The notes under the pieces: generated by a model
What the model was told of the DNA's origin: nothing
Databases searched by the model: none
The model's input: the letters and a program-made list of their open reading frames with translations, nothing else
Assembly: GCF_964204645.1 (NCBI RefSeq)
Contig: NC_134033.1
Location: forward strand, 826,131-890,130
Length of the DNA: 64,000 nucleotides
Direction of reading: 5' to 3'
DNA from: Tubulanus polymorphus
Lineage: Eukaryota > Animalia > Nemertea
Program-made: the position numbers and the translations under genes
Shown here: positions 23,233-47,200 of the stretch, in pieces
How the letters are laid out: each line of letters opens with the position of its first letter
Numbering within the stretch: the stretch's first letter is position 1

Positions 23233-23524
23233 CCCTTTCAGTGCGTCTACACCGCAGTGCGGTGTATAAATCAGCGATAGAGTTCGCTGGTACACCGCAC
23301 TGCGGTGTATTGATGTAATTAGTAAATTAGTTTTTATCTCTATTCAAAGATGGCAGCACGTGTCTAATGTAGTGAAATACTAGTAACTAACGATACACCG
23401 TACTGCGGTGTAGATGTGATGTAGCGGTATTCCCGTTATTCAACGCACTAGGGCGGAATTTCTCAAAATTTTCAAATCATCTCCATCACTACAGGGTATT
23501 AATTTTAAGTCAGCGCTGAAAGGG
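23233..23524. mobile_element. piggyBac-type MITE
   Basis: tcaa|CCCTTTCAG ... CTGAAAGGG|ttaa; inverted homolog of 39631-39909. Confidence 0.8.
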
Positions 23525-23674
23525 TTAAACAAGTTCATCAAATAAGGAACCAAAAACATCGCAGCAGAATTTAATACAATCTTTCGTCGTCCACCAATCA
23601 AGAGGTACATCCGGTTTCCGCACTCTCTCGACCGATCCGGGGCAGACGGACTCGCTGGTCGTCGTCGCCGTCGG

Positions 23675-23823
23675 TTACACGGTTTCGTAGCTGCTCTTGG
23701 ATCGGCGGCGACCGATGATGTAAGCGATCAGCACGATGACGACCAGAACGGCTAGAGCGATTCCGACAGCTATCGGTACGATATTACTCGTTTTATTTTC
23801 AGCATCGGCCGGGCATATTTGAT
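23675..23823 (-). CDS. LAMP alternative terminal exon B (TM plus tail ...IGRRRSKSSYETV*)
   Basis: Acceptor ttcttccgacag, phase 1 matching the donor at 28773. Encodes NQICPADAENKTSNIVPIAVGIALAVLVVIVLIAYIIGRRRSKSSYETV. Confidence 0.9.
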
Positions 23824-24513
23824 CTGTCGGAAGAAAAAAATAATCATTTGATCAAAAATCATAAATTCAATTCCGCTTTGAAACTATCCTTTTCAACGTT
23901 TTACAAACTGCCTCTTAATCTTGAGGAATCAAGGTTTGTTTTTTTTTTTTGTACGACAAAAAATTGCTATTCTCATTTTTGGCGAAAGACATTTTACTTG
24001 AATGTTCACATTTTTAAGAAACTAATCTAAATTTAGACGAAATATGAAAAAGTTTTAATAGCGTGCGTGTGAGTTTAATAGAGAACGGATCGTGAATTAA
24101 AGAGGCTTGAAATAAAAACAGCTTAAAACTAAAACTATCAGTTATAATTTCTAAGACTCTGAAAATAGAAGCAACGGTTATAAATAGAAATGACAGTGAA
24201 ACTCGCAGCTGCGACGAGATCATTACGTCGACGACATCAAAACGATTGATTGCGCTTAGAATTGAAATTAGAATTTAAAATATTTAAATCGAGGTTCAAA
24301 CGTAGAGATGACTTCCGTTAATGTGACGACTTTTCAAATGAGTTTCACTGTACACACAGCAAACGAAGGAAAAATCCGAGACCACATCAGGGGCCCAAAC
24401 ATGATACACAGAATCTAGTTCCACATTTCCGGACCCGGTTTCACAGCTAATCTACCCAGTTACACGGTAGTTGGTTAAGTCGGACTGTTAAGTCAAAATT
24501 AGTTCATTTCTGG

Positions 24514-24603
24514 ATCCAGTTCCACAGTTCTGAGTTAAGATTAGACTCCGAGTTAACTCATTGAAAATGAACTAACTTTAACTCACAAATGTGGAACTGG
24601 GCC
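24514..24603. mobile_element. Palindromic Harbinger-like MITE (family A)
   Basis: GATCCAGTTCCACAG ... GTGGAACTGGGCC, surrounded by further terminal fragments. Confidence 0.7.
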
Positions 24604-27567
24604 CTTATGTTTAATTAATCCTAGATTCAAAATCATAACCAGAACCGTGGAACTTGGTCTACAAACTGTGGAACTGGATCTACAAACTGTGGAACTGGAT
24701 CCAGTATTCTAGGGTGATATGTTTGGACCCCGAATCAAGTCAAACGAAATAAATGTTAATTTATGTTAATGAATGAGCGATTTGCATGCATAATTTACAG
24801 TGAGTTTCATAAAATTCGACCGCGGACTCTTTGAACCCACAAGACTTCACTTAAATGGACTCAAACAATTTACCAGGGTAAAAGAGTAATTATAAAGACT
24901 ACCCACTATTAGATCATGCATGCAACATCACCACGAACACAATATAACAGTAAACACAAGCGCATTACATTTCAATTCAGTTAGAAATCGTATTTTTGGA
25001 AGTGAAAAAGTGGAAAAATTCATCGAAGATTTGCACGAAGTGTCGCTCAGAGTTTATCAGCAGAGTTTACTATACAAAAGTACAAGACAAACAAACGACA
25101 AGAACCGTAAAACAATAGTTTAACAGTTCACAGTGTCTACTACTCCACAGAGACTACAGTAGGGGTTCACATTAGGGGTGGATCCAGATACTGTAGGTGG
25201 TATTAAACTACACCTGAAATATCAGGCGCTTTTTCGAAACCAGCTTGGTGCCATTTGGATTTGAGTACTTTAAAATTTCATAAACGTTTTCCCTTGGAGA
25301 ATGGAATGGAGGATATATGGTTTGTGTTGGAGGACTGGATCCGCCCGGCTGAAACCTGTATTATTGAGTTATAGATTTAAGAAACACACAAATAACATAA
25401 ACATAGAAAATAAAGCGAAGCAGCAAAACTGAATACGGACAATTAGAGATTGATATATTGTAGATAGATATTTGAGGGGTTTGGATACCTACCCGAGCTG
25501 TGTGTGGTGGTGTGAGGGGTTTAAACACTGCGATCGGGAGATATACGAGAGACTAAAACTATTGTATTTTACAATATTCTCGTGCTGCATGTCGCACAGT
25601 ATGTCAGTGCATACTGCTGCATGTAGGAGCATGTTTCCGCATACTGCTGCATGTAGGAACATGTCGCCGCATGCAGGAGCATGTTACCGCATATGGCTGC
25701 ATGTAGGAGCATGTCATCGCATACTGCCGCAATGAAGAGATAAATTACTAACGAAGCTCTTTAAAATGAAATGGAAATTAGTGGCAAGTTCTACAGTAAA
25801 TAATATCAAATAAATCGTAATCACTCAGAAATAAAAATTAAATGGTTCAGTGGGAAATAATATCAAAACAGCATCACAAGATGTGGGACTGGGTAGTGAG
25901 TAACCTGTGGAACTGGTTCCACAGCTTACTGTAAAATAAGGTGCCTTGCATATGAGTTTGTAATGGTAGTCTGGTAATTCATACTATGATGAACTGATAA
26001 TCGACCATAATCTGATGACATCAATTCTATTATTATTTCAGGTCACCTGCTATAATTATAAATCATTCTAGATTGAATCATCTATTCAATGACTCCCGTG
26101 TGACTGACTGACTTTCACATGACTCCCACGCGACTGACTGACAGTCTCTCACTTGAGTCAATGAGCCAACAGTCACATTTTAATTTTAAGTTTGTGATAT
26201 ATCTGCGATAAAAAGTCCGAAGCAATTCTTAACATGAAAAAGCGCCACCTACGCAATATTTACAAAAGTTTTGAAGAGCAAACGGGCAAAATTTGCCCTT
26301 GACCTCGTTACAGGCATTCACCTAAACGGAATAGCCAAGGTCAACAGCTCAACCAATCACATGTGTCAAGAAATTATATATATCATTATATTATCATTAA
26401 GCGCTTTGTCATTTTATACAAATTTACAAAAAAATTATTTGTGTCGTTTATTACTTGGGAGTTATTGTCAAGATAATTACTCCAAATTCATAGCTAGCAC
26501 ATTTTTGAAAATATGGGGGCCACGCGTGCTTAAAATGTGCACAGGAGTAACTACCGTCTGTTTGTACCTATATTAAATGTGTTCTTAGAAAAGTGCTCGA
26601 AACAAATAATCCTTTCTTCATCAAAATAACCAACAATCTAAATTGAGTTTCTAAAATCTGAATTAATATAAACTATTGGAAAAACCGGCCCGCCCCCCAG
26701 ATCCAGTCCGACTAACAGGTATTAGCTAAGCTTGGTTAGAAAAATAAGTTCATTTCAGCTGAAATTCTAACCTTACAGTAAAATCCTAACCCAAAACTGT
26801 GAAAGCAGATCCTGAATTGAAATCATAAAATCCCCTATTTCATTTCAACCAAAACCCTCCCATAAATCCCCTAGTTTGCTATTTCGACCCAAACCTCCCG
26901 AACCGCGTCTGTCAATCGCAGTTCGGAATTTCGAAATACGGCTTGATTTTTAGATCGCACACTCGACCGAGAATGTTTTCTAATATCGACCTATCCTATG
27001 ACCAAAAACGTTATCGCACAAAATATTCGAAAACTCGATACGTAAGAACTAGAATTCGACCCCTAAACAGGTTAAAAGGTTTCTATATAATATCTTATCT
27101 TCACCGTTTAAAGTTCAGTTGCTTTTATCTATCGAAGTGAGTCGCCAGAATATCAAGCGTATGAAATACATGTATTATCATCTAGCGCATGGAGTTCCTC
27201 AAAATATAAAGCAACCTAAATGAACGACGTACTATTATTTGTTGGGCAATCTAGCCAAGACTTATATATAAATTATTATCGCCTAAAGACTGCCCCCCCC
27301 CCCCCAAGCAAAACATCTGATTTCAAACTGCTGGCCGCGTCATTAACTTATAAAACAAAGTCAACAAGTAAAATTAATATTTGATTTTCAAGTGCAGGCG
27401 TCCTACTACTATTAACCTGGGAAAACTACAGGAGCCAGTAGCACAGAGTCATGGCTTACGATTTACTGGTCCGGGACCAACTTAGTTCCATATAACAACT
27501 TGGACCAATCTTTAGATTAAGGACCGATTTTGGACTTAAAGAGTCATGACTCAACGACTGACTCCTG

Positions 27568-27704
27568 GTCCCGGTTCCATAGTCAAGACTTAAGACCGAA
27601 AGTGGTATTAAACCTTAAGATTGGTCCAAGTTGTTAGATTGGCTATAGAACTAAGTTAGTCTTAAACCGATCTTTAGTCTAAGCCTTGACCATGCAACCG
27701 GCCC
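27568..27704. mobile_element. Palindromic Harbinger-like MITE (family B, CTTAAGACC type)
   Basis: CTG|GTCCCGGTTCCATAGTC ... CATGCAACCGGCCC|CTG. Relatives at about 10250-10405, 29760-29850, 53133-53270 and 58195-58333. Confidence 0.65.
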
Positions 27705-27806
27705 CTGGTTTCACGAGCATGATCTATATCTAATGAGGTTCTATTCTCAGATCTAAATTCTACGACGCCGACAGCGATTGGGGAGGAATGAAATTAGCGG
27801 AATGTT

Positions 27807-30800
27807 TTAAAGAGCTTCGTAGCCGGTGTATTTTTTCCGACGACCGATCAAATAAGCGACGAGCACGATGACAACGAGCGCGGCTAGGGCGGCTCCGACT
27901 GCTATCGGCACGACGGTGCTAGTCTTTTTATCTCCCGCGCAAACTTGTTCTGTAAATCAAGAGAAAAAATAGAAACGTAACGATTTTAGAACGGGATCGA
28001 ATCCGAATTCGATTCGACGGTTTTCCGTTTCCATTCAAAAATGTTCGAAACGCAGATTCAGAAAACTGTCGAAGCGGAATTCGTTATTCTTTTCGCGGTA
28101 TTTGAATCGCTTGCAATGATCATCGCGTACGAAGGACGGGTTGAATTTCAGGTTGTAAAGAATTTCGCGACGAAAGATTTCAGTTGTAAATTTCGAGTAA
28201 TCAAAGTTCATTTCGACTAATTACGCGGTTTGATTTTGAGGGATGAAAAAAAATGTTTTCCGTAAGATTAAAAACACAACAATTCTGGAATATTCACATA
28301 TTCGTGAGAAGCAAAATTATCGGTGCAAAATTATCTTGGCGAGATAAGATTTAACCAAATTTCTTAATTTCTTCGTCGACTTGTCATACAGAGGCTGGTT
28401 TTGATTTCAAGACCGGTATTAACTTTAACCGGGGCTGGAAGCGGCAACTCAATTGTAAATGAAAAGTTATCCCGGGATTAGTTAAAACCAGTCTATAAAA
28501 CCAGCTCTGGGTGTTAAATTTAGGGTCAGAGAATCAGCTCATTTCCAATAATTTGACCAGTCAAATCGACCAACTGAGTCCAAAACCTTCTCCAGTGGAA
28601 CCTCCGTCAGAGGAACTCGGATAACCACAAGTTTAAGAAGACAATTTTGATAATTGGGTTAAAACCGATAAGAATTCGCTGGTTCCACTGCTAAACCGCT
28701 TGCGGACCCTAGCGACTTGCGCCCGGTTTTTTCGCGCAACCGGGAAATACAAATATTTCGAAAAAAACTTACTTCCGCCGGTGAAAGTCGTGCTGTTGTC
28801 CGTTTTGAAAGCCTGTGCCGTTAAATTGAACGTATCCATTTTAACGCCGTCCAGTTTGATTTCAGTTTTCGATACGCACGTGAACGAATTCGCGACGCCC
28901 GTTTTGAATTCGCCGAGGTTTACCGCATTCACAGTTCGTACACCTGTAAACCGAACAATATATTATTGTAATCCCCGATCATTTTTTTAACAGATTTTCT
29001 GATGATTTTAATTTTTTCATGGAACCCCAAGGAATTCAGGAACCAGTCATATCACTAACTGCCAATCAATAGGTAAGACATAGACAGAAGCTGTTCAATT
29101 TCACCCGCGATCTAATAACAATCGAAATAAATGTCCCTAAAGTTTATTTTTCAGCATTCATTTATACAAAATTCCCGGCGACGTTCTCCAAGTTTGAATA
29201 TTTCCCTGAATTCCAGGAAGGTGGCCCCGGCAACCTATCATTATGAGCATGGTATACATCTGATGGTCGACGTGAACCGATATCTAAGCGCTCCCGCCGC
29301 CCAAACCTTACCTGGCGATTTAGGGTCCTTGAATCTAGTCGCGTCGACGACGTACGTCATCGTGATATTGTCTAAAGCGTACTGTTTCGCGGTGGCGCCA
29401 GCGGTCAACTGATCAGTCACGACCTCTCCGAACTGTAGCTGTATCGACCATTTATTGTCGAAGAATTTCAACACGATAGTATCGGTGGAATTACCGCAGG
29501 TGCCTCCGGTGACGACCGCTCCCTTCGGTAGATTGACGATCGAGGTCGAGTTCGTGCCCTGAAAATAGTGTCAACCGTCAGTTAGTTATCGAGATGAGTC
29601 CAATCTTTCTGGATCGTAAACCACTTTCATTCTAAATATGTATTCAAAAACATTTTCTAAGGAACAATTTAAGAATTTGAGGGATATACCTCAGAATTTG
29701 AAGGTTTTTGTACTCGAATTCAATTTTAGAATATGAGGGTTGGATTCTATGGATTTGATCTTCTTAAATCTTGAGACTGGTCTTAAGTTGTAAGATCGAG
29801 TATAGAACTTAGTTGGTCTTAAATCTAAGCCATGACTATGCAACTGGCCCCAGGGTTCCACTGAGTCTGACGACCCGTGGATATGGATCCATGTCTTTGG
29901 TTAAATTAGACGAAAGAGTTTCGCAGAACTGAATCCAAAAACTAAGCAAATTATCAGAGAAAAAATAAGTCCCATGAATTATTCGGTTAATTTCCGATGT
30001 TTCGCTTGATTGAGTGAGACTATTCGATCCATTAAAATTCGAATCATATTTTTCTGTTAGCCAGTGAAAGGTTTTCGATCAAGTCGTGATTAAAACATGG
30101 TTTCGGACTGCGCGCTTGATTATACCTTTGACGTGACGTAAGGAATGGTGAATTGGGCTCCCATCTCTAGCACCACGCAAACGGTTACGTTATCGTCAGC
30201 CTTTAAGCTCCAGTGGCCAGTAGGGGGCGTCGGTGATGTCGTCGGTTTAGGTGTAACAGTTGTGACGGGTGGAGGTTGAACGGTAGTCGACACGTCCTGA
30301 TCGCATACGGCCTCTGGAAAAAACACGAGATCGGTCGTAACGATTCCTTCACGATCAATGACAATGAATATCTGAATTGAATTGAACATAATAATTCTAC
30401 CGAAACACTATCAACACAACTTCCAAAATCCAGAAACTATCGGGTGCTCACGTGAGCGGCCTTTAAAGCTCCGCGCAGCCCGTGTGGAGAAATGCTCTTT
30501 AATAAGAGTTCGCGGTCATTTTAAACGGTCATTTCTTTTACTTTTCTATGAAATGAATATCGAATTGAATCGCGTTAAGTTTAACTGGCTGAATATGTAG
30601 AAATTATTTTCGAAAAACGATGACGGATAGCAGTATTGAAAATAAACTGTTATGATGTGTCGTGTATTTGTGGCCTAGTGAACTGTGTGGCAATGTTAAA
30701 TTTCAGGATTCCCCCGGAATTCCCCGACCTTCATCACATTCCCGGATTTCCCTGCAGGGAATTCATTTTCACCTCTTTATTTTGAATCAAACAACTTAAG

Positions 30801-33129
30801 AACGGTTTAAAGATTTGCGGTTGTAAAGTCCGTTCCGAGTTCGTTTTCATCCGAACAATTCAATCCTAAAAATGTTAATACTCACTTTCTTTACTGTAGG
30901 TATCTTTTTTCACGTTATAAACCTGTATTTTCAGTTTCTTGAAGATGATCGATCCGGAATCAGAGTTCGAATCGTTCTGTAATTTCCGCGTTATCGGGCT
31001 GTTACATTCGAAATACTGCTTCGGGGTGGACATCTTTAATTTCTGAATGCCGCTCGCGTACAACATTTCTACAATAAATAACATGGAATTAGAGATCAAC
31101 GTAATAAAACATTTTCCCCGGAAAAAAAAAAACATGATATTTTCGAGTTTTCGTGAATTATTGAATGTCCTTCTGCACACTAGCGACACCTAGTGGATCC
31201 TCACTTGCCACAAGCGGAATCATTTATTGCTGCAGTAGTTGATGTCCTACTGCACACTAGTGACATCTAGTGGATCCTCACTTGCCATAAGCGGAATCCT
31301 CTATTGCTGCAGTAGTTGATGTCCTACTGCACACAAGTGACACCTAGTGGATGCTCACTTGCCATAAGCGGAATCCTCTATTGCTGCAGTAGTTGATGTC
31401 CTGCTGCACACTAGTGACACCTAGTGGATCCTCACTTGCCATAAGCGGAATCCTCTATTGCTGCAGTAGTTGATGTCCTACTGTACACTAGCGACACCTG
31501 GTAGATACTTAAGTACACTTACTGTTTTTTGCGTCAGTTGGAAGAGTCATGTTGAGGGACGCGTCAGTCAGGTACGCGAATCCAGTTTGTTGATCGAACA
31601 TCAACGTCAGAATATTATTACCGAAAACCAACTGGAATTCAGCCTTGGTAGAATTACCGGCGGCGCACGAACCGGGCGCGTTATCGCCAGCAGACGCAGG
31701 CATGGCTACCGTCGTCTGTAAATAGATTCTAACACGTCAACCACAAACCCTGTAACTAACTGTTACCCTCTAAGCCCTAGTCGACCTGATACACTAAGAA
31801 CTCGCTGGACTGCGCCCAGATTTCTATTCTATCCATGAAATAATATGTTACATGGTCCAAGAATATTTCAGGGAAAGCCTGTCTATTGATGCTTTTAAAT
31901 ACTATCTCATAACTTACATTTTTAGAACATTTGAAGCATAATTTTTTTAAATATATCTATGTCTTATCTGTTAAATGTTTTTATACTTTCTAAAGCACCG
32001 CAATTAAATCAAATTCAATCAGTATGGCACTTTATAAGAATATTCATTATTATTATTATTATTATTATGATTATTATTATTACTTACTGTTTTCGTTGTA
32101 TCTATTATTATTATTATTATTACTTACTGTGTTCGTTGTATTGGTTTTAGATTCGTAAGTCGCGAGAATTGACACTTCTAGATCCGCGATCAAACACACT
32201 TTTTTGCCATCTCTAATCTCGACGTGGATCGACTGAGACGTAGCTGTAGGAGAAGGAGAAGGAGAAGGAGGAGATAATGTGGTTACGCTCGTCGAGGTAG
32301 GAGTTGGGGTAGGAGCCGATGTCGGAGTTGGGGGAGGAGCCGATGAAGGAGTCGCGGGAGCTGCAGTAGTTTCAGGCGCCGCTGCGGTGCTGGTGGTATT
32401 CGCAGCTGATGCAGCTGAGGGATTTGGATAAAGGTAGCAAGCAGCGGGAATGTGTGCAAAAAAGAAAACAGAGATAAATCATGCATTTTGTGTTAGGTTC
32501 ATGGTTACATAAACTGAAGTCACTCCTAAAATGGTTAAAATTAAATCGATGAAGAAGATTTTAGGGTCTGGGGAAAAATAAACAAAAAAACAGTACAGTA
32601 CACAGTGCAGGGGGCCAAGTGAGGTATAGAAACTAGAGTTGATAGTGGTGTCCAGGAATTTTGACAAGTGCAGGGCTCAAGAACCTGGAATTTAGGGGGG
32701 GGGGGTCAGCTGAATCTTGACAATAGCAGTGCCAAGATCTGGAATGTTGATTTTGTCAGGGGTCCATGGGAATCTTGACACGTGCAGGGCTCAGGAATCT
32801 GGAAAGTAGGGTGTCCAGCACACTGCACAGCAGGAATTGACAATTGCAACACTCTGATCTGGATCCCAGGATCCCAGGATCTGGTGGATCTTGAGTTTGA
32901 CAAGAAGTGCCCAGATCCGGATTCTTTTCCACACATTGATAGGATAGGCCTACACAAATCCGATTGGGCCTAATCCGAAATCGAAAATGTGAAGTCGAAA
33001 TTTGTAAAAAATCGAAACAATGTCAATGACACGTTAAAACAAAATGACAACCGTTGAAGTAAACTTGAAATGAATGAACTTACCGGCCAGACACAGCACT
33101 AACGCGATTAGACTCCTCAGGTGTTGCAT
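27807..33129 (-). CDS. LAMP: Lysosome-associated membrane glycoprotein (LAMP1/2 family), isoform A. Exons 33129-33084, 32414-32128, 31715-31523, 31068-30886, 30313-30126, 29558-29312, 28943-28773, 27949-27807
   Basis: Signal peptide [15 protein letters not shown]; Thr/Pro mucin region; two LAMP domains with 4 Cys each and many NxS/T sites; Pro/Thr hinge; [25 protein letters not shown]; tail [11 protein letters not shown] (GYxxΦ). All junctions are in phase. Confidence 0.93.
31173..31505. repeat. 77-bp tandem repeat, about 4.3 copies, in a LAMP intron
   Basis: ctgcacactagcgacacctagtggatcctcacttgcc.. repeats at 31173, 31250, 31327 and onward. Confidence 0.92.
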
Positions 33130-36063: not shown

Positions 36064-38507
36064 AAATATATAAATGTAAAATACCACAAATCGTTGAAAG
36101 ACTAAAAAGTTTATTTCAAATACTAGAATTATTTCGGATGATGGTTCCTTATACTTTTAGAACTGAAGAAAATAAATTTTTAAGTCGTTTTAACTTATTC
36201 TAGGAATTTCACATTTATTCTTTTCATCGTGGATATTGTGATCTAACGCCGATATTTTTTAAAGAACTAATTGATATTTCGACACGTTCTAAGGTGGAAC
36301 CTTCAGGGGACCAGGTTCGTTTTAAATGATAGTTCACTGTACTATGAACTTAATTGATGTTGTCATATATTGGGACAAAATTCTAGTTTTGTAATAACCC
36401 GACAAATCGTCCAAACGAGGTTCCACTGTTTATAGTTTTTACAGTTTAACGATCTCGAAAAATGTATTTTTTTTTCGCGCGAAAACGAAATTTCGGCGAT
36501 AAAAAGACGATTCCTAGTGAAATAAACACGTAGCGATTCCTAGTGAAATAAACACGCAGTGAATCAACCATCGAAGAAATAAATGTAATTTTCAAACGGT
36601 TGATTTTGAAACCTCGTCAGAATCAACTATTCTCTCTAAAATTCGCAGAAGTGTAGTCTATACAGTGCAAAGCGTGCAAATTAAAATCGTTTTTAAAAAT
36701 CGTCTCTTTCATCTCCGCATAAATTGATAGTGAATTAAATATATATCTATTGATTACACTATTTGTGCTTGATAATAATTTATATATATATATATATATA
36801 TATATATGCAAATTCATAATTCTATTTACAATTTTATTGTTCGCAAAGACATATATATCACCTTAATACCAGATGGACATTTAGGGTACCTTAGGGAGGG
36901 GGGTTTGAGTTGCAGGTGAGCCAGGGGGAGGGGGAGGGAGGTGCGGGGAAACCAAAACCCTGTGAATGAAAATCCAAGCAGACACTAGTGATGGAGGGAT
37001 TTGACAATGATACGCGTGAACCATAGCTTGAAACCAGTTCCACAGTTGTGTAAGTAAGTTATATTTCAGCTTGTTGGGGATCCAGTTCCACAGTTCTGGA
37101 CCCAGTTCCACAGTTCTGGACCCAGTTCCACAGTTCTGGACTCAGTTCCACAGTTCTGTGTAAAATGGTACACGATGAAAATTATACAAATAATCTTTTA
37201 GATAGCCAGAGATGTATTAATGATATCATTGATTGGAAATATAATATTGTTGTTAGATTTCACTGAAATCAAGCGTTGTTTTTTTTTTTTTCTATTTACA
37301 TGCGCAGATAAAATAAATATCAATATTAATAAATAAATATATATCCTATAATGTAGAGGGACTTATATCGATCAACCTTAAATTCCAAGTTTCTGCAGGT
37401 ATTTATCTACAGCCTGTCCCTGCCTGCACCCCTCGAGGGAGTTAGCCTGACCCTGCCAGCACCCCTCGAGGGGGTCAGCCTGTCCCTGCCTGCACCCCTC
37501 GAGGGAGTTAGCCTGTCCCTGCCTGCACCCCTCGAGGGGGTCGTGGGGGTACGCATGGATACCGAATTCAAATCTTTATTTAGGGAAAGAAATTGTTTCG
37601 TGCTATTGAAGAAAAAAAAAGCAACTCAATTAAAATAACAGTTATTTACATTTCAGCATTGACGAACATTTAGACAAACCGGCTTAAGTCACGAGTCGCA
37701 CAGTCGTGACTACAGTCCAAAAATGGTCTGAAACCCTAATCTTGGTCTAAAAGCCGTTGAATCGGCTTTAGAACTAAAGATGGACTCAAAGCCATGACTA
37801 TATAACTGCCCCTTAATGTAATGATGACTGTTGATTTACACCAAGTAAATTGAATTGCAAATAAATGTATTTACTAAATATATTTACTATTTTATAAATT
37901 AGCATTAAAAAATAGAGATTACTTCAGTTATGTTACAAATTATCCAAATGATGACTTAACCAGGTTTGACTGTACAATTTGTTTCTAAAATTACAATGTC
38001 ACCACGACTAAGAAAACGTAAATATTTGTGTAACTATTTCAACAGCGAGTGACGTTATTTCGAAATAGCCCGATTGAATCCAATTTAAAATGGTTAACGT
38101 TGATATGACATTAAAATTGAGACCGAGGTTTTCAGGGGTGGGCCCAGAGGCCAGTTCTGAAGGATTTGTCACATCACAACAGGACATTGCGAAGTCCAAA
38201 ATGGCAATAAAACACACCCGCAATGTAGCTATTATCTTTTTCGACAAAAAAGGGCGCTCAAAAAAATTTCGATGGTTTTGAACAAGTCTCAAAAGTAACC
38301 TGTATTCAGGAAATTCAGAATAAATTCAAAAATTTGAATTCTTACTCAATCCTAACCGCAAAATTTGAAACTTAAAACTTGAAACTGGATTAAGAACCGG
38401 TACAAAGAAAGAAATTTCACAACGGGCAAAATGACATGGACAGATTATAGCATTGTGTCTGCTCACTAGGGGGCGTTGATAGGCCGTCTGCTCATCAGGG
38501 GGCGTTA

Positions 38508-40793
38508 CTAGTCGACTTTCACGACGCTGTATATTTTGCTGACGAACCAGAAACACGCGAAAAATCCGATCGTTCCTGAAGAAATGAGAGAAATTCCGTT
38601 AAAATTCTGAACGTCGGTTACGTTTCGGTTAAATTCGAAAATTCTAACTCGGCGACGACGTTTTTTTTTTTTACCTGTCAACAGGAAGAAACAGAACACC
38701 ATAATCAACGTGTATCCGAAATAAAGGAATGTACTCGCGGCGCCCTCTATCTCGAGTTTCGCGACGAAATAGTGGATGCAATAAACGAACAGGTAGAACG
38801 CGGTGAAACCGCTCGTCAGAAACGAACGCCACCACCAGTGATAATCCTGCAAAAATAAAATCAAATATTAAATATAGCCGCAAAGCAGCGATAACGGGTT
38901 TTCTGCTTTATTGATATAATCCTTCAAATGAAATATAGTGGCAAAGCACAGAATGGCCAGTTTCCAGTCTTTTACAAATCCCTTTTTCCCTGATTTTTCC
39001 ATGTTTATTACACAAAATTCCCCGAGAGTGAATCGGAGAAATTTCTAGGTTTGAAATGTAACAATCTATTCATTTTTCATTGAATCCCGTACGTGGCCAA
39101 TAGCATTATCCGAAATCCTGGAGTTTTACAGGTTTTTGGTGAAATTTATCAATTTCCAGGAGTTTTCCCAGATTTTTTTGTTTCCTGGGTTTTCGAGGTC
39201 AGTGGCGCCACCCTGAAGCAGCAATAATAGGTTTACTATTCAATAGATATCGCTGAAATATTCAATGGTGAAAGATACAATAGAATCAGATTGTAGAGAT
39301 CCCCGTGGTGGCGAAATATCTTAATGAAGTTTTCGCAGTCCGAAGTTTTTTTTTTTTAGAAGGCAAATGACACTCACCTCGGCGCAAAGATGGAAATAGC
39401 AAAGTAAAATGGTCGCTTCTGAACAGGTTATAATTAAAATGATGAAAACTAGAAACAGAAATCCGAACATGTAGTACATCTGATGTGACCTGAAAAACAT
39501 TTTAAAAAAACGCAAAAATGTCTTAGATATTTTTTTATCCAAACTCATCGAGAACAATTAAGACCCAAGTTCTCCTTTCGAAGATAGCAGTGAATTTTCG
39601 CAAGGAATTTCAAAGACTTAAACAACTTAACCCTTTCAATGCTGACTAATCAATACCCTTTAGTGCTAGAGTTAATTTGAAAATTTTTAAAAAATTCCAC
39701 CCTAGTGTGTTAAATAACGGGAATACCACTATAGTGCGTCTACACCGCGGCGCGGTGTATCGTTAGTTACCAGTATTTCACTATGTTTGACAGGTGCTGC
39801 CATTTTTCAAGAGAGATAATCAATGATTACATCAATACACCGCAGTGCAGTGTACTAGTAAAATCCATCACTGATTTATACACTGATTTATGTAGACGCA
39901 CTGAAAGGGTTAAAACATTATTGCCCTGATTCGTGACTGGATAAATGTATTTTTTTTGCGATTCCGACTGAAAAAGCAACTTAATTTTTAAGAAACTTTT
40001 CTTAAGAAACTTTTTGAAAGACCCAAACCAATAAACAAATACAGTCGACCACGCTGCACATAGATTAGGCTCAGTTACTCTTAAGCTACTAAGAAAAACA
40101 TGGTTTTAATGTCACTCGTGCGTCGGATGACTTTTAGTTATTTTCGGAAAACCGGGACCCGAGATTTTGAGACGCTTACCATATACTATTGAGAATGAAG
40201 AATAGCTGAATGAAGATACAGCCAAACGGTAAAACTCCTCCCATCAGTATCCCTGGTAACGGTTTAGTGTAAAACGATTGGTCGGGAATCTGTCGCGGAA
40301 TCTGATTCGTTCTCACCGGATGTTCCACTTGCTGCAAATCAACATACATTTACATACATTTACATACATTAACATACATTAACATAGATTTACATAAATC
40401 AGGCATCGAAATTATTCACAGAAGCCGAAAATCGTAATTTCGAATCGCGAATAGCGCTCACCCGTCTCTTGAAACCGAAATACGCGCCGACGAACGTGAG
40501 CGGTACCGACACGCCGAACCACAACGCCAACAGCGCCACCAGCGTACCGAACGGTATCGCCGCCGAGCTACTCTTCGCCCACAATATCAAATTCATGATG
40601 AAAAAGTCGACGAATACGAGACTGAAAAAACGTAACGAGAAAATTTCATTCGGCGATTATTCCTCGCGTTAAAACGAACGTTTTCGATTCGTAAATTCGA
40701 TGAAGTTTATTATTTACCCCGGACAAAAGAAAGCCGTTAATATCACATTACTTTTCCACTTCTCACCTCCAAACACTACAAATACATATACAA

Positions 40794-40868
<75 letters not shown>

Positions 40869-41199
40869 TTATCATTATTATTTTTATTATTATTATTATT
40901 AGCTTTATTATCTTCATATGTAATTATCACTTAGTTTAGTTTATTATTTTTTCAGGGCAATCCCCCTTTCAGGCCCAGCCCCTAGGGCTTGGGGTTGTCC
41001 TTCTTATTTATGTACCTATTTATCTATAAAATTATATCCAAAGAAATTATGTCTAATTATCTTGGACGTATTATAAGTAAATAAATAATTCATTCATTCA
41101 TTCATTCATTCATTCATTCATTCATTCATTCATTCATTCATTCATTCATTCATTCATTCATTCATTCATTCATGCATTCATTCATTCATTCATGCATTC

Positions 41200-41250
<51 letters not shown>

Positions 41251-44200
41251 GTACACATCGAAATCCCGAGACTGGGTGTTCTCTGGAACAAATTCCCCCT
41301 ATGACATCATTATTGACTTACTCTTATAGACGCGTGCTGATATATATCCAGCTGGAGTTCCTAGACACACATACAGAACAATAACGCAAGTCATCAGAGC
41401 GCCGCGATTGTTCGGAGATAAAAATCCGAAACACGCAAAACCTACAAAAACAACAAATCATAGATAAACATCGACGTAAAATTGACACATCAGCAGTTGA
41501 TACAATCAGAGGCGGCAGACGCTCAAAAAATGGTTAGATTTAACCGGTGGATAGTTGACATAGTCCGAAAACAGGTTCAAAAGATGAGTTATCATCCCGT
41601 ACACAGCCCCCATCTTAGGTAAAATCAACACATCTGCGGTTAATACAATCAGAGGCAGACGCTCAAAAAATGGTTAGAGTTAACCAGTGGATAGTTGACA
41701 TAGTCCGAAAACAGGTTCAAAAGATGAGTTAGCATCCCGTACACAGCCCCCATCTTAGGTAAAATCAACACATCTGCGGTTAATACAATCAGAGGCAGAC
41801 GCTCAAAAAATGGTTAGAGTTAACCAGTGGATAGTTGACATAGTCCGAAAAGAGGTTCAAAAGATGAGTTAGCATCCCGTACACAGCCCCCATCTTACGT
41901 AAAATTAACACGAACCAATCAGAGGCAGCAGACGCTCTTAAGTTGGTTAGAGCAAATAGTTAACACAGTGACAATTATAAGTTCATCGTTACTACGGTTT
42001 TTAATATATACCGGTTATTATCGACCAACTGGCCTCAGGAAGGATTATAACCTCATACTTAAAGACAATTTTAAAATTCATAAATTCTGAACTCCGCTGT
42101 ATACGGCATTAAAAAAGGGGATTGAAATATTTCGAGACATTTTTCGGTTTTTTTTTAAGATAACAATATCTAATAAATACAATAGATTAGGCGAATACAA
42201 AATTTAAATTCTAAATCGATACTAAAATCGTAGATATTTTACCTAATGTGATGAACGTCATGCAGAGTATTTGAACTCCGCTGCCGAGCAAAACCGACAA
42301 CATCATTCCTTTACGCGGGGGCCGGAAAACATCTCCGTGAACGAGTTTCCATCCGAATTCCTCCTGAGCGTCCTCCTGTAACCGCGGGAAACGAGACAAC
42401 AGAGAGAGAGTTAGAATGATTGATACTGAGACGGCAGCATTTCTACAGATCACTCATTCCTGGATGTAAGAAGGAGTCTTCGAGGAGTTATATATAAAAA
42501 AGAAAATTTAAGGAATGCCCACAATCACTTTCATATCCTAATCACTGTAGACACCTCCTAAATCCGTGTACACGGCCTATTTCGGTAAACCTATATTCTG
42601 TAAGCTAATTTCAATCCTTAACACAACCTAAATTTGGTAACCGATTGATAACAAATAGATCCTGCTTAGAACTGTATGGAGTTAGTCTAATGCACTTCTT
42701 TCTGCAGAATCTGATTGCTGCCTATTTCTCAAAATTGAAGGTGTTTCTAGTGTCATTTCGTTAAAACCTAAGGAGTTGTAGATAGTAGCTAGTTTGGCCG
42801 CAGGGCGGGGAATTGTAGGGAGTAGCTAGTTTGGCCGCAGGGCGGGGAATTGTAGGGAGTAGCTAGTTTGGCCGCAGGGCGGGGAATTGTAGGGAGTAGC
42901 TAGTTTGGCCGCAGGGCGGGGAATTGTAGGGAGTAGCTAGTTTGGCCGCAGGGCGGGGAATTGTAGGGAGTAGCTAGTTTGGCCGCAGGGCGGGGAATTG
43001 TAGGGAGTAGCTAGTTTGGCCGCAGGGCGGGGAATTGTAGGGAGTAGCTAGTTTGGCCGCAGGGCGGGGAATTGTAGGGAGTAGCTAGTTTGGCCGCAGG
43101 GCGGGGAATTGTAGGGAGTAGCTAGTTTGGCCGCAGGGCGGGGAATTGTAGGGAGTAGCTAGTTTGGCCGCAGGGCGGGGAATTGTAGGGAGTAGCTAGT
43201 TTGGCCGCAGGGCGGGGAATTGTAGGGAGTAGCTAGTTTGGCCGCAGGGCGGGGAATTGTAGGGAGTAGCTAGTTTGGCCGCAGGGCGGGGAATTGTAGA
43301 GAGTAGCTAGTTTGGCCGCAGGGCGGGGAATTGTAGAGAGTAGCTAGTTTGGCCGCAGGGCGGGGAATTGTAGAGAGTAGCTAGTTTGGCCGCAGGGCGG
43401 GGAATTGTAGGGAGTAGCTAGTTTGGCCGCAGGGCGGGGAATTGTAGGGAGTAGCTAGTTTGGCCGCAGGGCGGGGAATTGTAGGGAGTAGCTAGTTTGG
43501 CCGCAGGGCGGGGAATTGTAGGGAGTAGCTAGTTTGGCCGCAGGGCGGGGAATTGTAGAGAGTAGCTAGTTTGGCCGCAGGGCGGGGAATTGTAGAGAGT
43601 AGCTAGTTTGGCCGCAGGGCGGGGAATTGTAGAGAGTAGCTAGTTTGGCCGCAGGGCGGGGAATTGTAGGGAGTAGCTAGTTTGGCCGCAGGGCGGGGAA
43701 TTGTAGGGAGTAGCTAGTTTGGCCGCAGGGCGGGGAATTGTAGGGAGTAGCTAGTTTGGCCGTAGGGCGGGGAATTGTAGGGAGTAGCTAGTTTGGCCGC
43801 AGGGCGGGGAATTGTAGGGAGTAGCTAGTTTGGCCGCAGGGCGGGGAATTGTAGAGAGCAGCTAGTTTGGCCGCAGGGCGGGGAATTGTAGGGAGTAGCT
43901 AGTTTGGCCGCAGGGCGGGGAATGCGGTTCGTACTTACAGCATTATCCATCTGATTGTATCTAGCGATATCTTTATGTAACGTCCTCAGCAGAATCATAG
44001 CGACCATACCGGACAGGAACAACACGATCACTAACGAGTTCATTATACTACAAAACAATTAATATTCAAATCGTTAATTTCTCTGATCAGTCATTTCCGG
44101 ATATATCTGCGTCATTTTCATATCCTTCCTAAATCGGTACGGGTTATCTCGGTAAACATTTTATTCGATGGTTTTGTAATCAAAGTTTCGTTCTTAAGAC

Positions 44201-47200
44201 TAACTAAACTCTGTTTCTAATTTGGTAACCACCTGATTGGGTAAAAACAAATCCCAACTGGTACGATAACCACACTCAAACGTGGTGAACAGATGATAAG
44301 AGAAAAACCCACTATTTAAAAATTCAAAGAAATCTAAAATCGAGAATTTATCAATTGAAACAATCTAAAATATAAAAAGTTTCTGGCATTTTGCTCAAAT
44401 TGAGAGTTTCAAGCCCCTCATAGGACGTATGATATCATAGGACTTGTAAGGACCCTGTTAGTTAAAGCGACTGACCTGAACCACTGGATGTTTGTATGAG
44501 GCATCGATTCCAGAATGTAATCCCATCTCGACGACCATTTTATATTCGTCTCCTACGAACAACAAACAAAACCGTTAAAATTCGAATTCGTTTTAAATAG
44601 ATGGATTTCACAAGTATTTCAACTACTGGAACCGGGTTTTAAATCACGAATAAAACCACATGCCAGTCCGAAACTAGAACAGTTAAACCGTGTCCTGGTT
44701 TGTTCCTAGGACCAGTACAACAGTCAGGACTTAGCTTTAAGACCGATCTAAGATCATCCAGGACTATAGCCACATTCTCTGACAACTTTCTAAGACCAGT
44801 GGACTAAACACAGCGAAACTATGCTATGTGCTTTGGATAAAGATTTTTTGGTCTAAAATCAGACTTACAGTAAAAGAGACTGAGTAAGTGTATTTGATTT
44901 TCTCATTCTTCGAGAATTTAGAGTCTATAGCCATCGGAGCGGTTCCAGCATTACATCCTTCAGGACCTTCTTTAGTGTGTTTGATACTGAAATCATCAAC
45001 AAAATCACTATTAGTTACATGTTAGTTCAGATTCCCAGTCACTGCAGAGGACTTTTCAAGGAGAAAATTTCAAATTCCGAGGAGTGTATGCATCACTTTC
45101 ATATCTCAATCACAGTACCACCCCCCCCCCCTAGTTTGGTCAGGTTTATCTCAGTAAACCGTTAAATCATTGTAATCTGTACGTATAAGGCCTATGACTG
45201 CTAACTAGGCCTAAAACCTTAAAATTTTCTAATGGCCAATTTCTCAAAATTAGAGGAGTTTCAAGGACTTCCGGGCATTTTGCTCAAATTCAAGGATATT
45301 CAAGGACGTTGAAAATCATTTTTGGTTTAGAAGAGTTTTCAAGGAATCAAGTAGTCGTAGGGAGCCTGTAGTTGTATGTGGAACTGTATAATGAATCAGT
45401 ACGTACCTTTTTGGTTCCAGTTTAGCCGATATTAAACGTCCACTTTTACCGGACGGCGACGCCCATTCTTGACCGGTACTCGGATGATATCCGATCACTA
45501 TATTCACGTGGTTAAACACGTAATACGTATCGGCTTTACTGAAATCAGACTGAAAATAAAAAACAATATAGAATCATTTAAAGGGTAAACATTGTCTGCC
45601 GACCACATTCTGGGTTCTAGAGATTGTCTGCCGACCACATTCTGGGTTCTAGCTGTCAGTTTAGACCTTGACTCTTCTTTGACTGTTGAAAATGAACTAT
45701 CTTAAAATAGGTTTTAACTTTTAACTCCACAAGTGAGTTCCACAGTACAGACTGAACCCAGTTCCACAGTTCAGACTGAACCCAGTTCCACAGTTCAGAC
45801 TGAACCCAGTTCCACAGTTCGGACTGAACCCAGTTCCACAGCTGAGAATGAACCCAGTTCCACAGTTCAGACTGAACCCAATTCGACAGCTGAGACTGAA
45901 CTCAGTTCCACAGTTCAGACTGAACCCAGTTCGACAGCTGAGACTGAACTCAGTTCCACAGTTCAGACTGAACTCAGTTCCTCAGTTCAGACTGAACTCA
46001 GTTCCACAGTTCAGACTGAACTCAGTTCCACAGTTCGGACTGAACCCAGTTCCAAAGCTGAGACTGAACTCAGTTCCTCAGTTCACACTGAACCCAGTTC
46101 CACAGTTCACACTGAACCCAGTTCCTCAGTTATACTTACACTAGTGACGCACGCATCTTTTGCTTTGCCATCTTTAGTTACGAAGCAACCCATCGGAAAT
46201 CCGGGTGAACAGTATTTCTGATTACCTTCGACATCGTAACACCAGGTTACAGGCATGTTATCTATAATCCTACAAAAACAACAACAACAGATCAGTCATT
46301 CCTAGATATAAGTTTTAACAGGGTCCTTACAGATCGGTCATTCCTAGATATAAGTTTTAACAAGGTCCTTACAGATCGGTCATTCCTAGATATAAGTTTT
46401 AACAAGGTCCTTACAGATCGGTCATTCCAAGATATAAGTTTTAACAAGGTCCTTACAGATCGGTCATTCCTAGATATAAGTTTTAACAAGGTCCTTACAG
46501 ATCGGTCATTCCTAGATATAAGTTTTAACAAGGTCCTTACAGATCGGTCATTCCTAGATATAATTTTTAAGGGCATCCGAACAGATCAGTCATTCCTGGA
46601 TTTAAGGAGTTTTTTAAAGGAGCAAATTTCAAATTTCTACATAACATTCATATCTCGATTACAATAGACTCCTCCTCAAAATCAGTACGGTTTATCTCTC
46701 CATTGGATGTAAACCATTAAAGAATTCAAGGAAATTGAAAAACATTTTTGGTTAAGAAGGAGTTTTTAAGGAATCTAGGACCCTGTAAAGGAGAAAATTG
46801 ACAATTTCAAGGAAGCGTCTGCATCACTTTCATATACTATTCCTAATTACAGTAGACTCCTCCTAAATCGGTAATGTTTATTTCAGTAAACCATTTAATT
46901 CAGTGGTATTGGTATAGGGGTTAGGGTTAGGGGACTAACTCGATAAACCACAGTGATATTTACCAGTGATGTTGATAATTCATCAATATTCCCTTTTTAA
47001 TAAAAGCGAGCGACGTCGCTGATTTCGCGTCTCCTATTTTATACTCCTTCGTGCACAGCGTTTTACATTTCTCCGCTTTCAAAAACTCGATCTAGAAAAA
47101 ATCGAACAAAAATCGGTTAAACAGGTCTAGAAAACCGCGTCTTACCCGGACAAGGTTTCCAGCGGTGAGGCCAGGGTAAAAAGAAGTACTAAGACGGACT

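What the first reader, a model, noticed from the sequence alone, without database searches (positions are those of the whole stretch)
23675..28943. Invertebrate-type LAMP gene with two alternative TM/cytoplasmic-tail exons (LAMP-2-like isoform switch)
Seen: the last lumenal exon ends at a phase-1 donor (28773). Two paralogous terminal exons 4 kb apart each have a good acceptor, the same phase, the last Cys of the LAMP domain, a TM helix and a stop. Exon A ends ...[15 protein letters not shown] (27949-27807); exon B ends ...YIIGRRRSKSSYETV* (23823-23675). They are similar in protein but diverged at synonymous sites, and no second set of lumenal exons was seen between them. Known: vertebrate LAMP2 makes 2A/2B/2C isoforms in exactly this way, and both the Gly before Tyr and the last hydrophobic residue tune lysosome versus surface routing. 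Inference: this animal makes a canonical GYxxL lysosomal isoform and a Gly-less SYxxV isoform likely to traffic more via the plasma membrane. It would be either a convergent or an ancestral version of a system usually treated as vertebrate-specific, and it bears on the origin of LAMP-2A-type chaperone-mediated autophagy.
Basis: partly seen in the sequence, partly recalled or inferred. Interest (0 to 1): 0.85.

Follow-up and report, generated by a model that had tools for sequence, protein, structure and literature searches.

The report
Ribbon-worm LAMP gene, two alternative tails
The main lysosomal membrane glycoprotein (LAMP) gene of the ribbon worm Tubulanus polymorphus ends in two duplicated last exons that give alternative membrane anchors and sorting tails; a distant ribbon worm keeps the same pair, so it most likely arose separately from the LAMP2 isoform switch of vertebrates.

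Summary
On the minus strand, exon 7 of a two-domain LAMP gene (28943-28773, phase-1 donor) is followed by two homologous terminal exons. These are 8A (27949-27807, tail [11 protein letters not shown]) and 8B (23823-23675, tail RRRSKSSYETV). Both match Pfam's LAMP transmembrane model.

The genome is Tubulanus polymorphus (Nemertea). RefSeq annotates only 8B forms; 8A is unannotated.

Contigs of two runs from two studies carry the intron-less joint 28773->23823, so 8B is spliced to exon 7. For 8A the evidence is indirect. One contig stops exactly at the 8A acceptor with 29 letters left over, and the exon-7 contig breaks one letter past the donor.

Lineus longissimus has RefSeq isoforms with the same two tail types, in the same order and phase. 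dN/dS between orthologous exons is about 0.1.

Seven other invertebrate LAMP loci show one such exon. A land snail has its own, separate duplication.

The pair is therefore old within ribbon worms and probably convergent with vertebrate LAMP2. The exon tree cannot exclude shared ancestry. 8B is the major, ancestral-type exon, and its missing Gly is specific to Tubulanus.

Routing differences and any link to chaperone-mediated autophagy are untested. The scan noted other alternative last exons in this genome, but none in LAMP.

The parts
33084..33129 (-). Exon 1, coding part: start codon and signal peptide
   Evidence: Exact mapping of RefSeq proteins P0151 and P0001 on the window
32128..32414 (-). 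Exon 2: optional Pro/Thr/Ser-rich stretch, then the start of LAMP domain 1. A second acceptor at 32243 gives the short form (isoform X2).
   Evidence: X1 uses 32414, X2 uses 32243
31523..31715 (-). Exon 3, LAMP domain 1
   Evidence: weak PF01299 match
30886..31068 (-). Exon 4, end of LAMP domain 1
30126..30313 (-). Exon 5: Pro/Thr-rich hinge and start of LAMP domain 2
29312..29558 (-). Exon 6, LAMP domain 2
   Evidence: The loose end behind 28946 in run X1 codes for the end of this exon.
28773..28943 (-). Exon 7: last common lumenal exon, with a phase-1 donor shared by both terminal exons
   Evidence: PF01299 positions 105-147. The X3 contig starts one letter before 28773.
27807..27949 (-). 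Exon 8A coding part (proximal, unannotated): last lumenal Cys, TM helix, tail [11 protein letters not shown] and stop. The 3' UTR runs at least to 27628.
   Evidence: X3 record 23 lies on 27628-27949 and stops at the acceptor. It is orthologous to the Lineus A-type exon.
25493..27806 (-). Probable long 3' UTR of the 8A form; its end is not mapped
   Evidence: X3 contigs lie end to end on 25493-27949. None are listed on 27950-28772 or 23824-25492. No AATAAA or ATTAAA lies within 1 kb of the stop.
23675..23823 (-). Exon 8B coding part (distal, annotated, major): last lumenal Cys, TM helix, tail RRRSKSSYETV and stop
   Evidence: Joint 23823->28773 in runs X1 and X3. It ends both RefSeq isoforms.
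23371..23674 (-). 3' UTR of the 8B form, at least this far; ATTAAA at 23575
   Evidence: X3 record 17 lies on 23371-23823

Best explanation
This is the LAMP1/2-type lysosomal membrane glycoprotein gene of Tubulanus polymorphus. It has eight coding exons, two lumenal LAMP domains, a hinge, one TM helix and an 11-residue tail. Its last exon was duplicated in tandem before Tubulanus and Lineus diverged.

The donor of exon 7 (28773, phase 1) joins either the near acceptor (8A, 27949) or the far one (8B, 23823). Each terminal exon brings its own last lumenal cysteine, TM helix, tail, stop codon and 3' UTR. The choice is therefore an alternative-last-exon decision: splice and polyadenylate at 8A, or skip it and use 8B.

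8B is the main form and keeps the tail type common to invertebrate LAMPs. 8A is a minor, derived form.

The TM core barely changes (19 of 23 residues). The two forms differ in the lumenal juxtamembrane linker and in 7 of 11 tail residues around the Y-x-x-hydrophobic sorting signal.

Shown here: the exon pair, the 8B junction, and conservation with purifying selection on both exons. Inferred: 8A junction use, from contig boundaries. Inferred from vertebrate LAMP biology only: that the tails change adaptor binding and so the balance between direct and surface-mediated delivery to lysosomes.
For: Sequence and phase.

Pfam:
- PF21222 matches both exons.
- PF01299 twice plus PF21222 match the whole protein.
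- There are eight lumenal Cys.

RNA:
- The joint 23823->28773, with GT..AG ends on the gene's strand, is seen in X1 and X3, two studies.
- The genome holds no second copy of exon 7, so this is not a retrocopy.
- X3 record 23 ends exactly at 27949 with 29 letters over. This equals the 29-letter side of the 8B joint.
- X3 record 24 breaks one letter past the donor. That fits a fork in the assembly graph, since both exons begin with A.

Lineus:
- RefSeq X1 and X2 end in RRRSRSGYESV and RRKRYQGYEAL.
- Its locus has A proximal and B distal, in phase 1.

Orthologous exon pairs:
- A to A is 35/45 identical and B to B is 36/46, against 29-33 of 45-46 between types.
- dN/dS is 0.08 and 0.11.
- The A-type clade has support 93/96.

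Distribution: one TM exon within the gene plus 10 kb in Owenia, Branchiostoma, Acanthaster, Solemya, Saccostrea, Nematostella and Wyeomyia. The duck LAMP2 control showed all three of its exons.
Against: - The 8A joint itself was not among the 15 joints printed (38 were not shown), so 8A use in Tubulanus rests on contig ends.
- RefSeq models no 8A isoform.
- In X1 the listed contig over 8A is unspliced.
- No poly(A) hexamer was found near the 8A stop.
- The exon tree has 47 columns. AU tests reject neither a within-species duplication (p 0.17) nor other groupings.
- The runs' kind is not on record.
- Only one LAMP locus was checked per outgroup species.
- Nothing here tests protein routing.
Confidence: 0.8

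Rival explanations
1. The exon pair is ancestral to bilaterians and homologous to vertebrate LAMP2 exons. A-type would correspond to LAMP-2B (RRKxYxGYxxL, proximal) and B-type to LAMP-2C (RRxSRxGYxSV, distal), with losses in most invertebrate lines.
For: - Tails: Tubulanus A against duck 2B is 7/11 identical, and Lineus B against duck 2C is 8/11. The crosswise pairs are 5/11 (alignment).
- In both lineages the L-ending exon is proximal and the V-ending exon distal.
- The last intron has the same position and phase 1 in all taxa.
- The AU test does not reject a clade of nemertean A with LAMP-2B (p 0.36).
Against: - A single TM exon in amphioxus, sea star, annelid, two bivalves, sea anemone and mosquito would need many independent losses.
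- The best tree groups vertebrate 2B with 2C and keeps nemertean A apart.
- The likeness of B to 2C is the shared ancestral tail type.
- The snail's separate, younger duplication shows that this exon duplicates repeatedly.
- The literature dates LAMP2 to the vertebrate genome duplications (PMC9221867).
Confidence: 0.08
2. Exon 8A is an unused or nearly unused relic in Tubulanus. The gene in practice makes only the 8B protein, as RefSeq models it.
For: - Both RefSeq isoforms use 8B.
- No 8A joint is in the printed table, and the listed X1 contig crosses the 8A acceptor unspliced.
- No 8A-containing protein fragment is in the protein collection.
- No poly(A) hexamer follows it.
Against: - The frame is open, the acceptor is strong (82% pyrimidines) and the Cys, TM and tail are intact.
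- dN/dS against Lineus A is 0.08, with synonymous sites near saturation.
- The X3 contig ends exactly at the acceptor, and the exon-7 contig forks there.
- The Lineus A form is an annotated isoform.
Confidence: 0.1
3. Exon 8B belongs to another gene, to a retrocopy, or to an assembly artefact.
For: It lies 4.9 kb from exon 7, beyond another complete terminal exon. The runs that show the joint are not on record as RNA.
Against: - The joint with splice-site ends is seen in two studies.
- Run X2 has continuous contigs across the region.
- Exon 7 occurs once in the genome, so there is no retrocopy.
- Lineus has the same layout.
Confidence: 0.01

Closest known systems
Vertebrate LAMP2 with alternative exons 9B, 9A and 9C (LAMP-2A/2B/2C)
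   Same: - A two-domain LAMP gene whose last exon was duplicated in tandem. That exon holds the last Cys, the TM helix, the short tail, the stop and the UTR.
- The copies are joined alternatively to one phase-1 donor at the same place in the protein.
- The copies differ mostly in the tail, around the Tyr signal.
- The distal copy keeps the ancestral ..GYxSV type.
   Different: - There are two exons, not three.
- The gene is a LAMP1/2-type gene from before the vertebrate duplications, not an orthologue of LAMP2.
- No exon has a LAMP-2A-like tail (His-rich, ending in F).
- The exon tree and the taxon distribution favour a separate origin.
- No function has been tested.
Lineus longissimus LAMP1-like isoforms X1 and X2 (XP_064639577.1, XP_064639578.1)
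   Same: The orthologous gene with the same A-type and B-type terminal exons, the same order and the same phase.
   Different: - Both forms are annotated there. In Tubulanus only B is.
- Lineus B keeps the Gly (SGYESV).
- The introns are shorter (1.5 and 3.1 kb).
Single-tail invertebrate LAMPs (for example Drosophila Lamp1, amphioxus and oyster LAMP1-like)
   Same: - The same family.
- The same last intron.
- A B-type tail ..RxGY[EQ]xV.
   Different: - They have one terminal exon only.
- Fly Lamp1 has a single LAMP domain (bioRxiv 10.1101/2021.03.03.432938).
Tandem exon duplication-derived alternative 3' exons as a class (Nucleic Acids Res 2021, PMC8373072)
   Same: Homologous adjacent exons that swap a protein segment, both kept under purifying selection for a long time.
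   Different: That catalogue lists the LAMP2 event among human 3' triplets and does not name it among the events it traces to invertebrates. This is a parallel case in another phylum.

Membership tests
LAMP family, LAMP1/2 type | Two lumenal LAMP domains (PF01299) behind a signal peptide | tested here: met
   PF01299 scores 83 bits in two stretches on P0151. The exons match in order.
LAMP family, LAMP1/2 type | Four conserved cysteines per lumenal domain and a Pro/Thr/Ser-rich hinge | tested here: met
   Lumenal Cys lie at 89, 128, 197, 240 and at 282, 320, 404, 442 of P0151. The hinge is visible. The last Cys lies in exon 8A or 8B.
LAMP family, LAMP1/2 type | C-terminal TM segment of LAMP type (PF21222) | tested here: met
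   8A scores 58.8 bits and 8B 56.5 bits, against a cut-off of 27.
LAMP family, LAMP1/2 type | Tail of about 11 residues ending in G-Y-x-x-hydrophobic at the very C-terminus | tested here: met
   8A ends in GYEAL. 8B ends in SYETV: it keeps the length, the Tyr position and a hydrophobic end but has Ser for Gly.
LAMP family, LAMP1/2 type | Residence in lysosomes or late endosomes | not testable with these tools
   This needs imaging or cell fractionation.
Vertebrate LAMP2 (orthologue with 2A/2B/2C) | Orthology to the LAMP2 paralogue that arose in the vertebrate genome duplications | tested here: inconclusive
   - RefSeq calls the gene LAMP1-like.
- The terminal-exon tree does not group it with LAMP2 exons, but AU tests reject nothing.
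- The literature places the LAMP1/LAMP2 split inside vertebrates (PMC9221867).
Vertebrate LAMP2 (orthologue with 2A/2B/2C) | A LAMP-2A-type exon (basic, His-rich tail ending in GYEQF) | tested here: not met
   The alignment shows neither nemertean tail like the duck or fish 2A tails.
Tandem-duplicated alternative last exons | Adjacent homologous exons with the same phase, each with an acceptor and a stop | tested here: met
Tandem-duplicated alternative last exons | Each copy joined to the common upstream exon in RNA | tested here: inconclusive
   The 8B joint is seen in two runs. 8A is inferred only from a contig ending at its acceptor and a fork at the donor.
Tandem-duplicated alternative last exons | Both copies conserved under purifying selection in another species | tested here: met
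   Lineus has A-type and B-type exons, with dN/dS of 0.08 and 0.11.

The most novel reading that the evidence does not exclude
The proximal L-ending exon and the distal V-ending exon of ribbon worms are the same pair as vertebrate LAMP-2B and LAMP-2C. On this reading tail switching in LAMP predates vertebrates, and perhaps bilaterians, and was lost many times. LAMP-2A and chaperone-mediated autophagy would then have been built on an old isoform system.
Probability: 0.08. Interest if true: 0.8.

Novelty: new member of a known kind. Interest (0 to 1): 0.45.

Why it matters
Reviews treat alternative TM/tail exons of LAMP as a vertebrate LAMP2 feature and treat invertebrate LAMP as a single-tail protein (PMC9221867, PMC8373072).

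This case shows a second animal phylum keeping two LAMP tails under selection over a deep split. A snail has a third, separate duplication. Together they suggest that the phase-1 intron in front of a self-contained terminal exon makes tail duplication easy, and that cells gain from having more than one LAMP sorting tail.

It also offers a natural experiment on the roles of the Gly before Tyr and of the last residue. It adds an unannotated coding exon to the Tubulanus gene set. It gives no support for chaperone-mediated autophagy in invertebrates.

Tried and rejected
- **Pfam family over the whole genome:** nothing found. Single exons are too weak for this search, and the controls did not ring either.
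- **Run X7 (guessed RNA):** nothing was laid.
- **Protein search with exon 8A alone:** no Tubulanus fragment with a spliced 8A and no further A-type exon.
- **Tail-only search with the Lineus A form:** no A-type tail outside Lineus.
- **Gly-less ..SSYEALS tails from the representative search:** first considered as B-like alternative exons elsewhere. They are sponge LAMP-like genes (Amphimedon). On a metagenomic contig they are separate tandem genes.
- **Isoform labels in oyster, amphioxus and sponge:** the isoforms have identical tails, so their differences lie elsewhere.
- **Exon tree and AU tests:** too few columns to decide between one origin and two.
- **Poly(A) hexamer search after 8A:** negative. 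The contig end at 25493 has no clear signal either.
- **Look-up of the Saccostrea echinata protein:** not on record.
- **Joined exon 7 plus 8A protein:** All searches used single exons by reference or database proteins.
Full report
**What is in the sequence**

The gene lies on the minus strand. The last common lumenal exon runs from 28943 to 28773. It follows an AG and ends one base into a codon, before GTAAGT.

Two terminal exons follow:
- **8A** begins at 27949, behind a pyrimidine-rich tract (82% pyrimidines) and AG. In phase 1 it reads through a Cys, a TM helix and the tail [11 protein letters not shown] to a stop at 27807.
- **8B** begins at 23823 behind AG. In the same phase it reads through a Cys, a TM helix and the tail RRRSKSSYETV to a stop at 23675.

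Both match Pfam PF21222, the LAMP transmembrane segment, at 58.8 and 56.5 bits against a cut-off of 27. They are 63% identical. The differences are unevenly spread:

| Segment | Identical residues |
|---|---|
| TM core | 19 of 23 |
| Lumenal linker | 6 of 12 aligned |
| Cytosolic tail | 4 of 11 |

At the DNA level dS is 0.88 and dN is 0.26. The window has no third copy and no second copy of any lumenal exon. The whole genome has exon 7 once. It has just one further LAMP-type terminal exon, on another contig. Between 8A and 8B there are only repeats.

**Which gene and which animal**

A profile of the two exons, searched over 1.84 billion representative proteins, found a 430-residue protein that ends with 8B. 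It is XP_074658476.1, 'lysosome-associated membrane glycoprotein 1-like isoform X2' of Tubulanus polymorphus, a palaeonemertean ribbon worm.

Isoform X1 (487 residues) differs only by a 57-residue Pro/Thr/Ser-rich stretch behind the signal peptide. This comes from a second acceptor in exon 2, at 32414 against 32243. Both isoforms end with 8B, so 8A is not annotated.

Mapping X1 on the window gives eight coding exons. The protein has two PF01299 domains, PF21222, eight lumenal cysteines and a hinge. It is a full two-domain LAMP.

**RNA evidence**

No run is on record as RNA. Even so, contigs of X1 (2024 study) and X3 (2014 study) carry the joint 23823->28773. The skipped part begins CT and ends AC on the plus strand, which is GT..AG on the gene's strand.

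- Exon 7 occurs once in the genome, so the joined form is not a retrocopy.
- A loose end behind 28946 codes for the end of exon 6, so upstream splicing is seen too.
- Run X2 covers the whole stretch evenly and unspliced, as DNA would. This also speaks against an assembly artefact.

For 8A the joint is not among the 15 printed (38 were not shown), but the contig ends point to it:
- X3 record 23 (355 letters) lies on 27628-27949. It stops exactly at the 8A acceptor with 29 letters left over. This is the same length as the exon-7 side of the 8B joint in that run.
- X3 record 24 starts one letter before 28773. Both terminal exons begin with A, so a fork in a 31-mer assembly graph would fall exactly there if both joints are present.
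- Listed X3 contigs lie end to end on 25493-27949. None lie on 27950-28772 or 23824-25492. This suggests a long 3' UTR behind 8A. The tool warns, however, that holes prove nothing.

I read this as likely use of 8A at a lower level than 8B. It is not shown. I had only one lay of reads and could not print the missing joint.

**Conservation**

Lineus longissimus is a heteronemertean, far from Tubulanus within the phylum. It has RefSeq isoforms X1 and X2 of the orthologous gene that differ only in the last exon. They end in RRRSRSGYESV and RRKRYQGYEAL.

In its genome the A-type exon lies 1.5 kb behind the last lumenal exon, and the B-type exon lies 3.1 kb further on. Both are in phase 1. This is the same order as in Tubulanus.

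| Exon pair | Identical residues | dN/dS |
|---|---|---|
| Tubulanus A vs Lineus A | 35 of 45 | 0.08 |
| Tubulanus B vs Lineus B | 36 of 46 | 0.11 |
| A vs B (within or across species) | 29-33 of 45-46 | - |

Synonymous sites between the species are near saturation. A-type exons, including one from an unnamed metagenomic contig, form a clade with support 93/96. The AU test does not reject a within-species duplication (p 0.17).

Six tail positions differ between the types in the same way in both species. The pair therefore predates the split of these two lineages, and both copies have been kept by selection.

**Distribution outside ribbon worms**

I fetched LAMP loci with 10 kb flanks and searched them with all four nemertean exons and each locus's own tail.

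- **Control:** duck LAMP2 showed its three exons in the order B, A, C.
- **One TM exon only:** Owenia (annelid), Branchiostoma, Acanthaster, Solemya and Saccostrea (bivalves), Nematostella and Wyeomyia.
- **Shared intron:** the last intron sits at the same place, in phase 1, in all of the loci examined.
- **Tail types:** the single tails are of the B type (..RxGY[EQ]xV). 8B is therefore the ancestral type and 8A the derived one.
- **A separate duplication:** the land snail Bradybaena has a second TM exon 570 bp before the annotated one, and the flanking intron is duplicated too. Its tail has no Tyr, and an AATAAA follows. This is a younger, separate event.

Among the 150 best representative hits, only Lineus and one unnamed contig carry an A-type tail. 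Clustering at 50% identity could hide others.

**Convergent or ancestral**

The A-type tail resembles duck LAMP-2B (7 of 11 identical) and the B-type resembles LAMP-2C (8 of 11 for Lineus). In both lineages the L-ending exon is proximal.

The best tree nevertheless keeps nemertean A apart from a vertebrate 2B plus 2C group. With 47 columns, the AU tests reject neither a nemertean-only clade (p 0.20) nor a clade of A with 2B (p 0.36). Seven single-exon loci in six phyla make repeated loss the costlier story. I put common ancestry at about 8%.

**Function**

Both tails keep 11 residues, with Tyr at the fourth position from the end. That is the LAMP signal geometry.

From work on vertebrate LAMPs, the Gly before Tyr and the last residue shift the share of molecules that reach lysosomes by way of the cell surface. 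One source is Gough et al. 1999, J Cell Sci 112:4257, cited in PMC2173715. The role of the Gly is from my own knowledge of the lgp120/LAMP-1 mutagenesis literature.

It also applies to Tubulanus alone, because Lineus B has the Gly. Neither tail resembles LAMP-2A, so nothing here speaks for chaperone-mediated autophagy.

**Literature and earlier notes**

- A review states that LAMP2 and LAMP2A arose at the root of vertebrates (PMC9221867).
- A catalogue of duplicated alternative exons lists the LAMP2 triplet and does not name it among the events it traces to invertebrates (PMC8373072).
- No paper in the library joins 'lysosome-associated membrane' with Nemertea.
- The Lineus isoforms exist only as automatic annotation.
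- Earlier notes of this scan report alternative last exons in other trafficking genes of this genome, namely Rab11, Ral and AP-1 sigma. I did not test them. They are context only.

**Limits**

**Verdict**

This is a real alternative-tail LAMP gene that is conserved across the ribbon-worm phylum. It most likely evolved in parallel with vertebrate LAMP2.

Noticed in passing
window 32128-32414, minus strand: Exon 2 has two acceptors, at 32414 and 32243. The long form adds a 57-residue Pro/Thr/Ser-rich, mucin-like stretch right behind the signal peptide (RefSeq X1 against X2). The gene therefore varies at both ends of the protein.
   Followed up: partly
L013:28949-29095 (Bradybaena similaris, GCA_050415755.1): A land-snail LAMP gene has a second, unannotated TM/tail exon 570 bp before its annotated last exon. 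The frame is open, the tail ends ..SRRKQKHSISI with no Tyr signal, an AATAAA follows, and the intron sequence in front of it is duplicated too. It is a separate and younger duplication of the same exon.
   Followed up: partly
L003 (G000:C1:2235661-2235789, minus strand): This is the terminal exon of a second LAMP-family gene in this genome. Its TM is more divergent and its tail is ..KRKKRGYANVD, with one residue after the Y-x-x-V. No paired exon was found for it.
   Followed up: no
P0205, P0209 (Amphimedon) and L006:8567-12250: Sponge LAMP-like proteins all have Gly-less tails of the form ..SSYEAL or ..SSYETL plus one extra residue. A 928-kb metagenomic contig carries two such short genes in tandem. 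A missing Gly before the Tyr is therefore normal in some animals.
   Followed up: partly
window about 38500-45000, minus strand: The upstream neighbour on the same strand looks like a TM9SF (nonaspanin/EMP70) gene, judged from conserved peptide stretches in open frames.
   Followed up: no
window 23300-23490, 24446-24827, 27502-27692 and 25609-25731: Three short interspersed repeats have depths in the tens of thousands in several runs. A 30-base minisatellite carries a 30-base insertion in runs X1 and X2 relative to the assembly.
   Followed up: no
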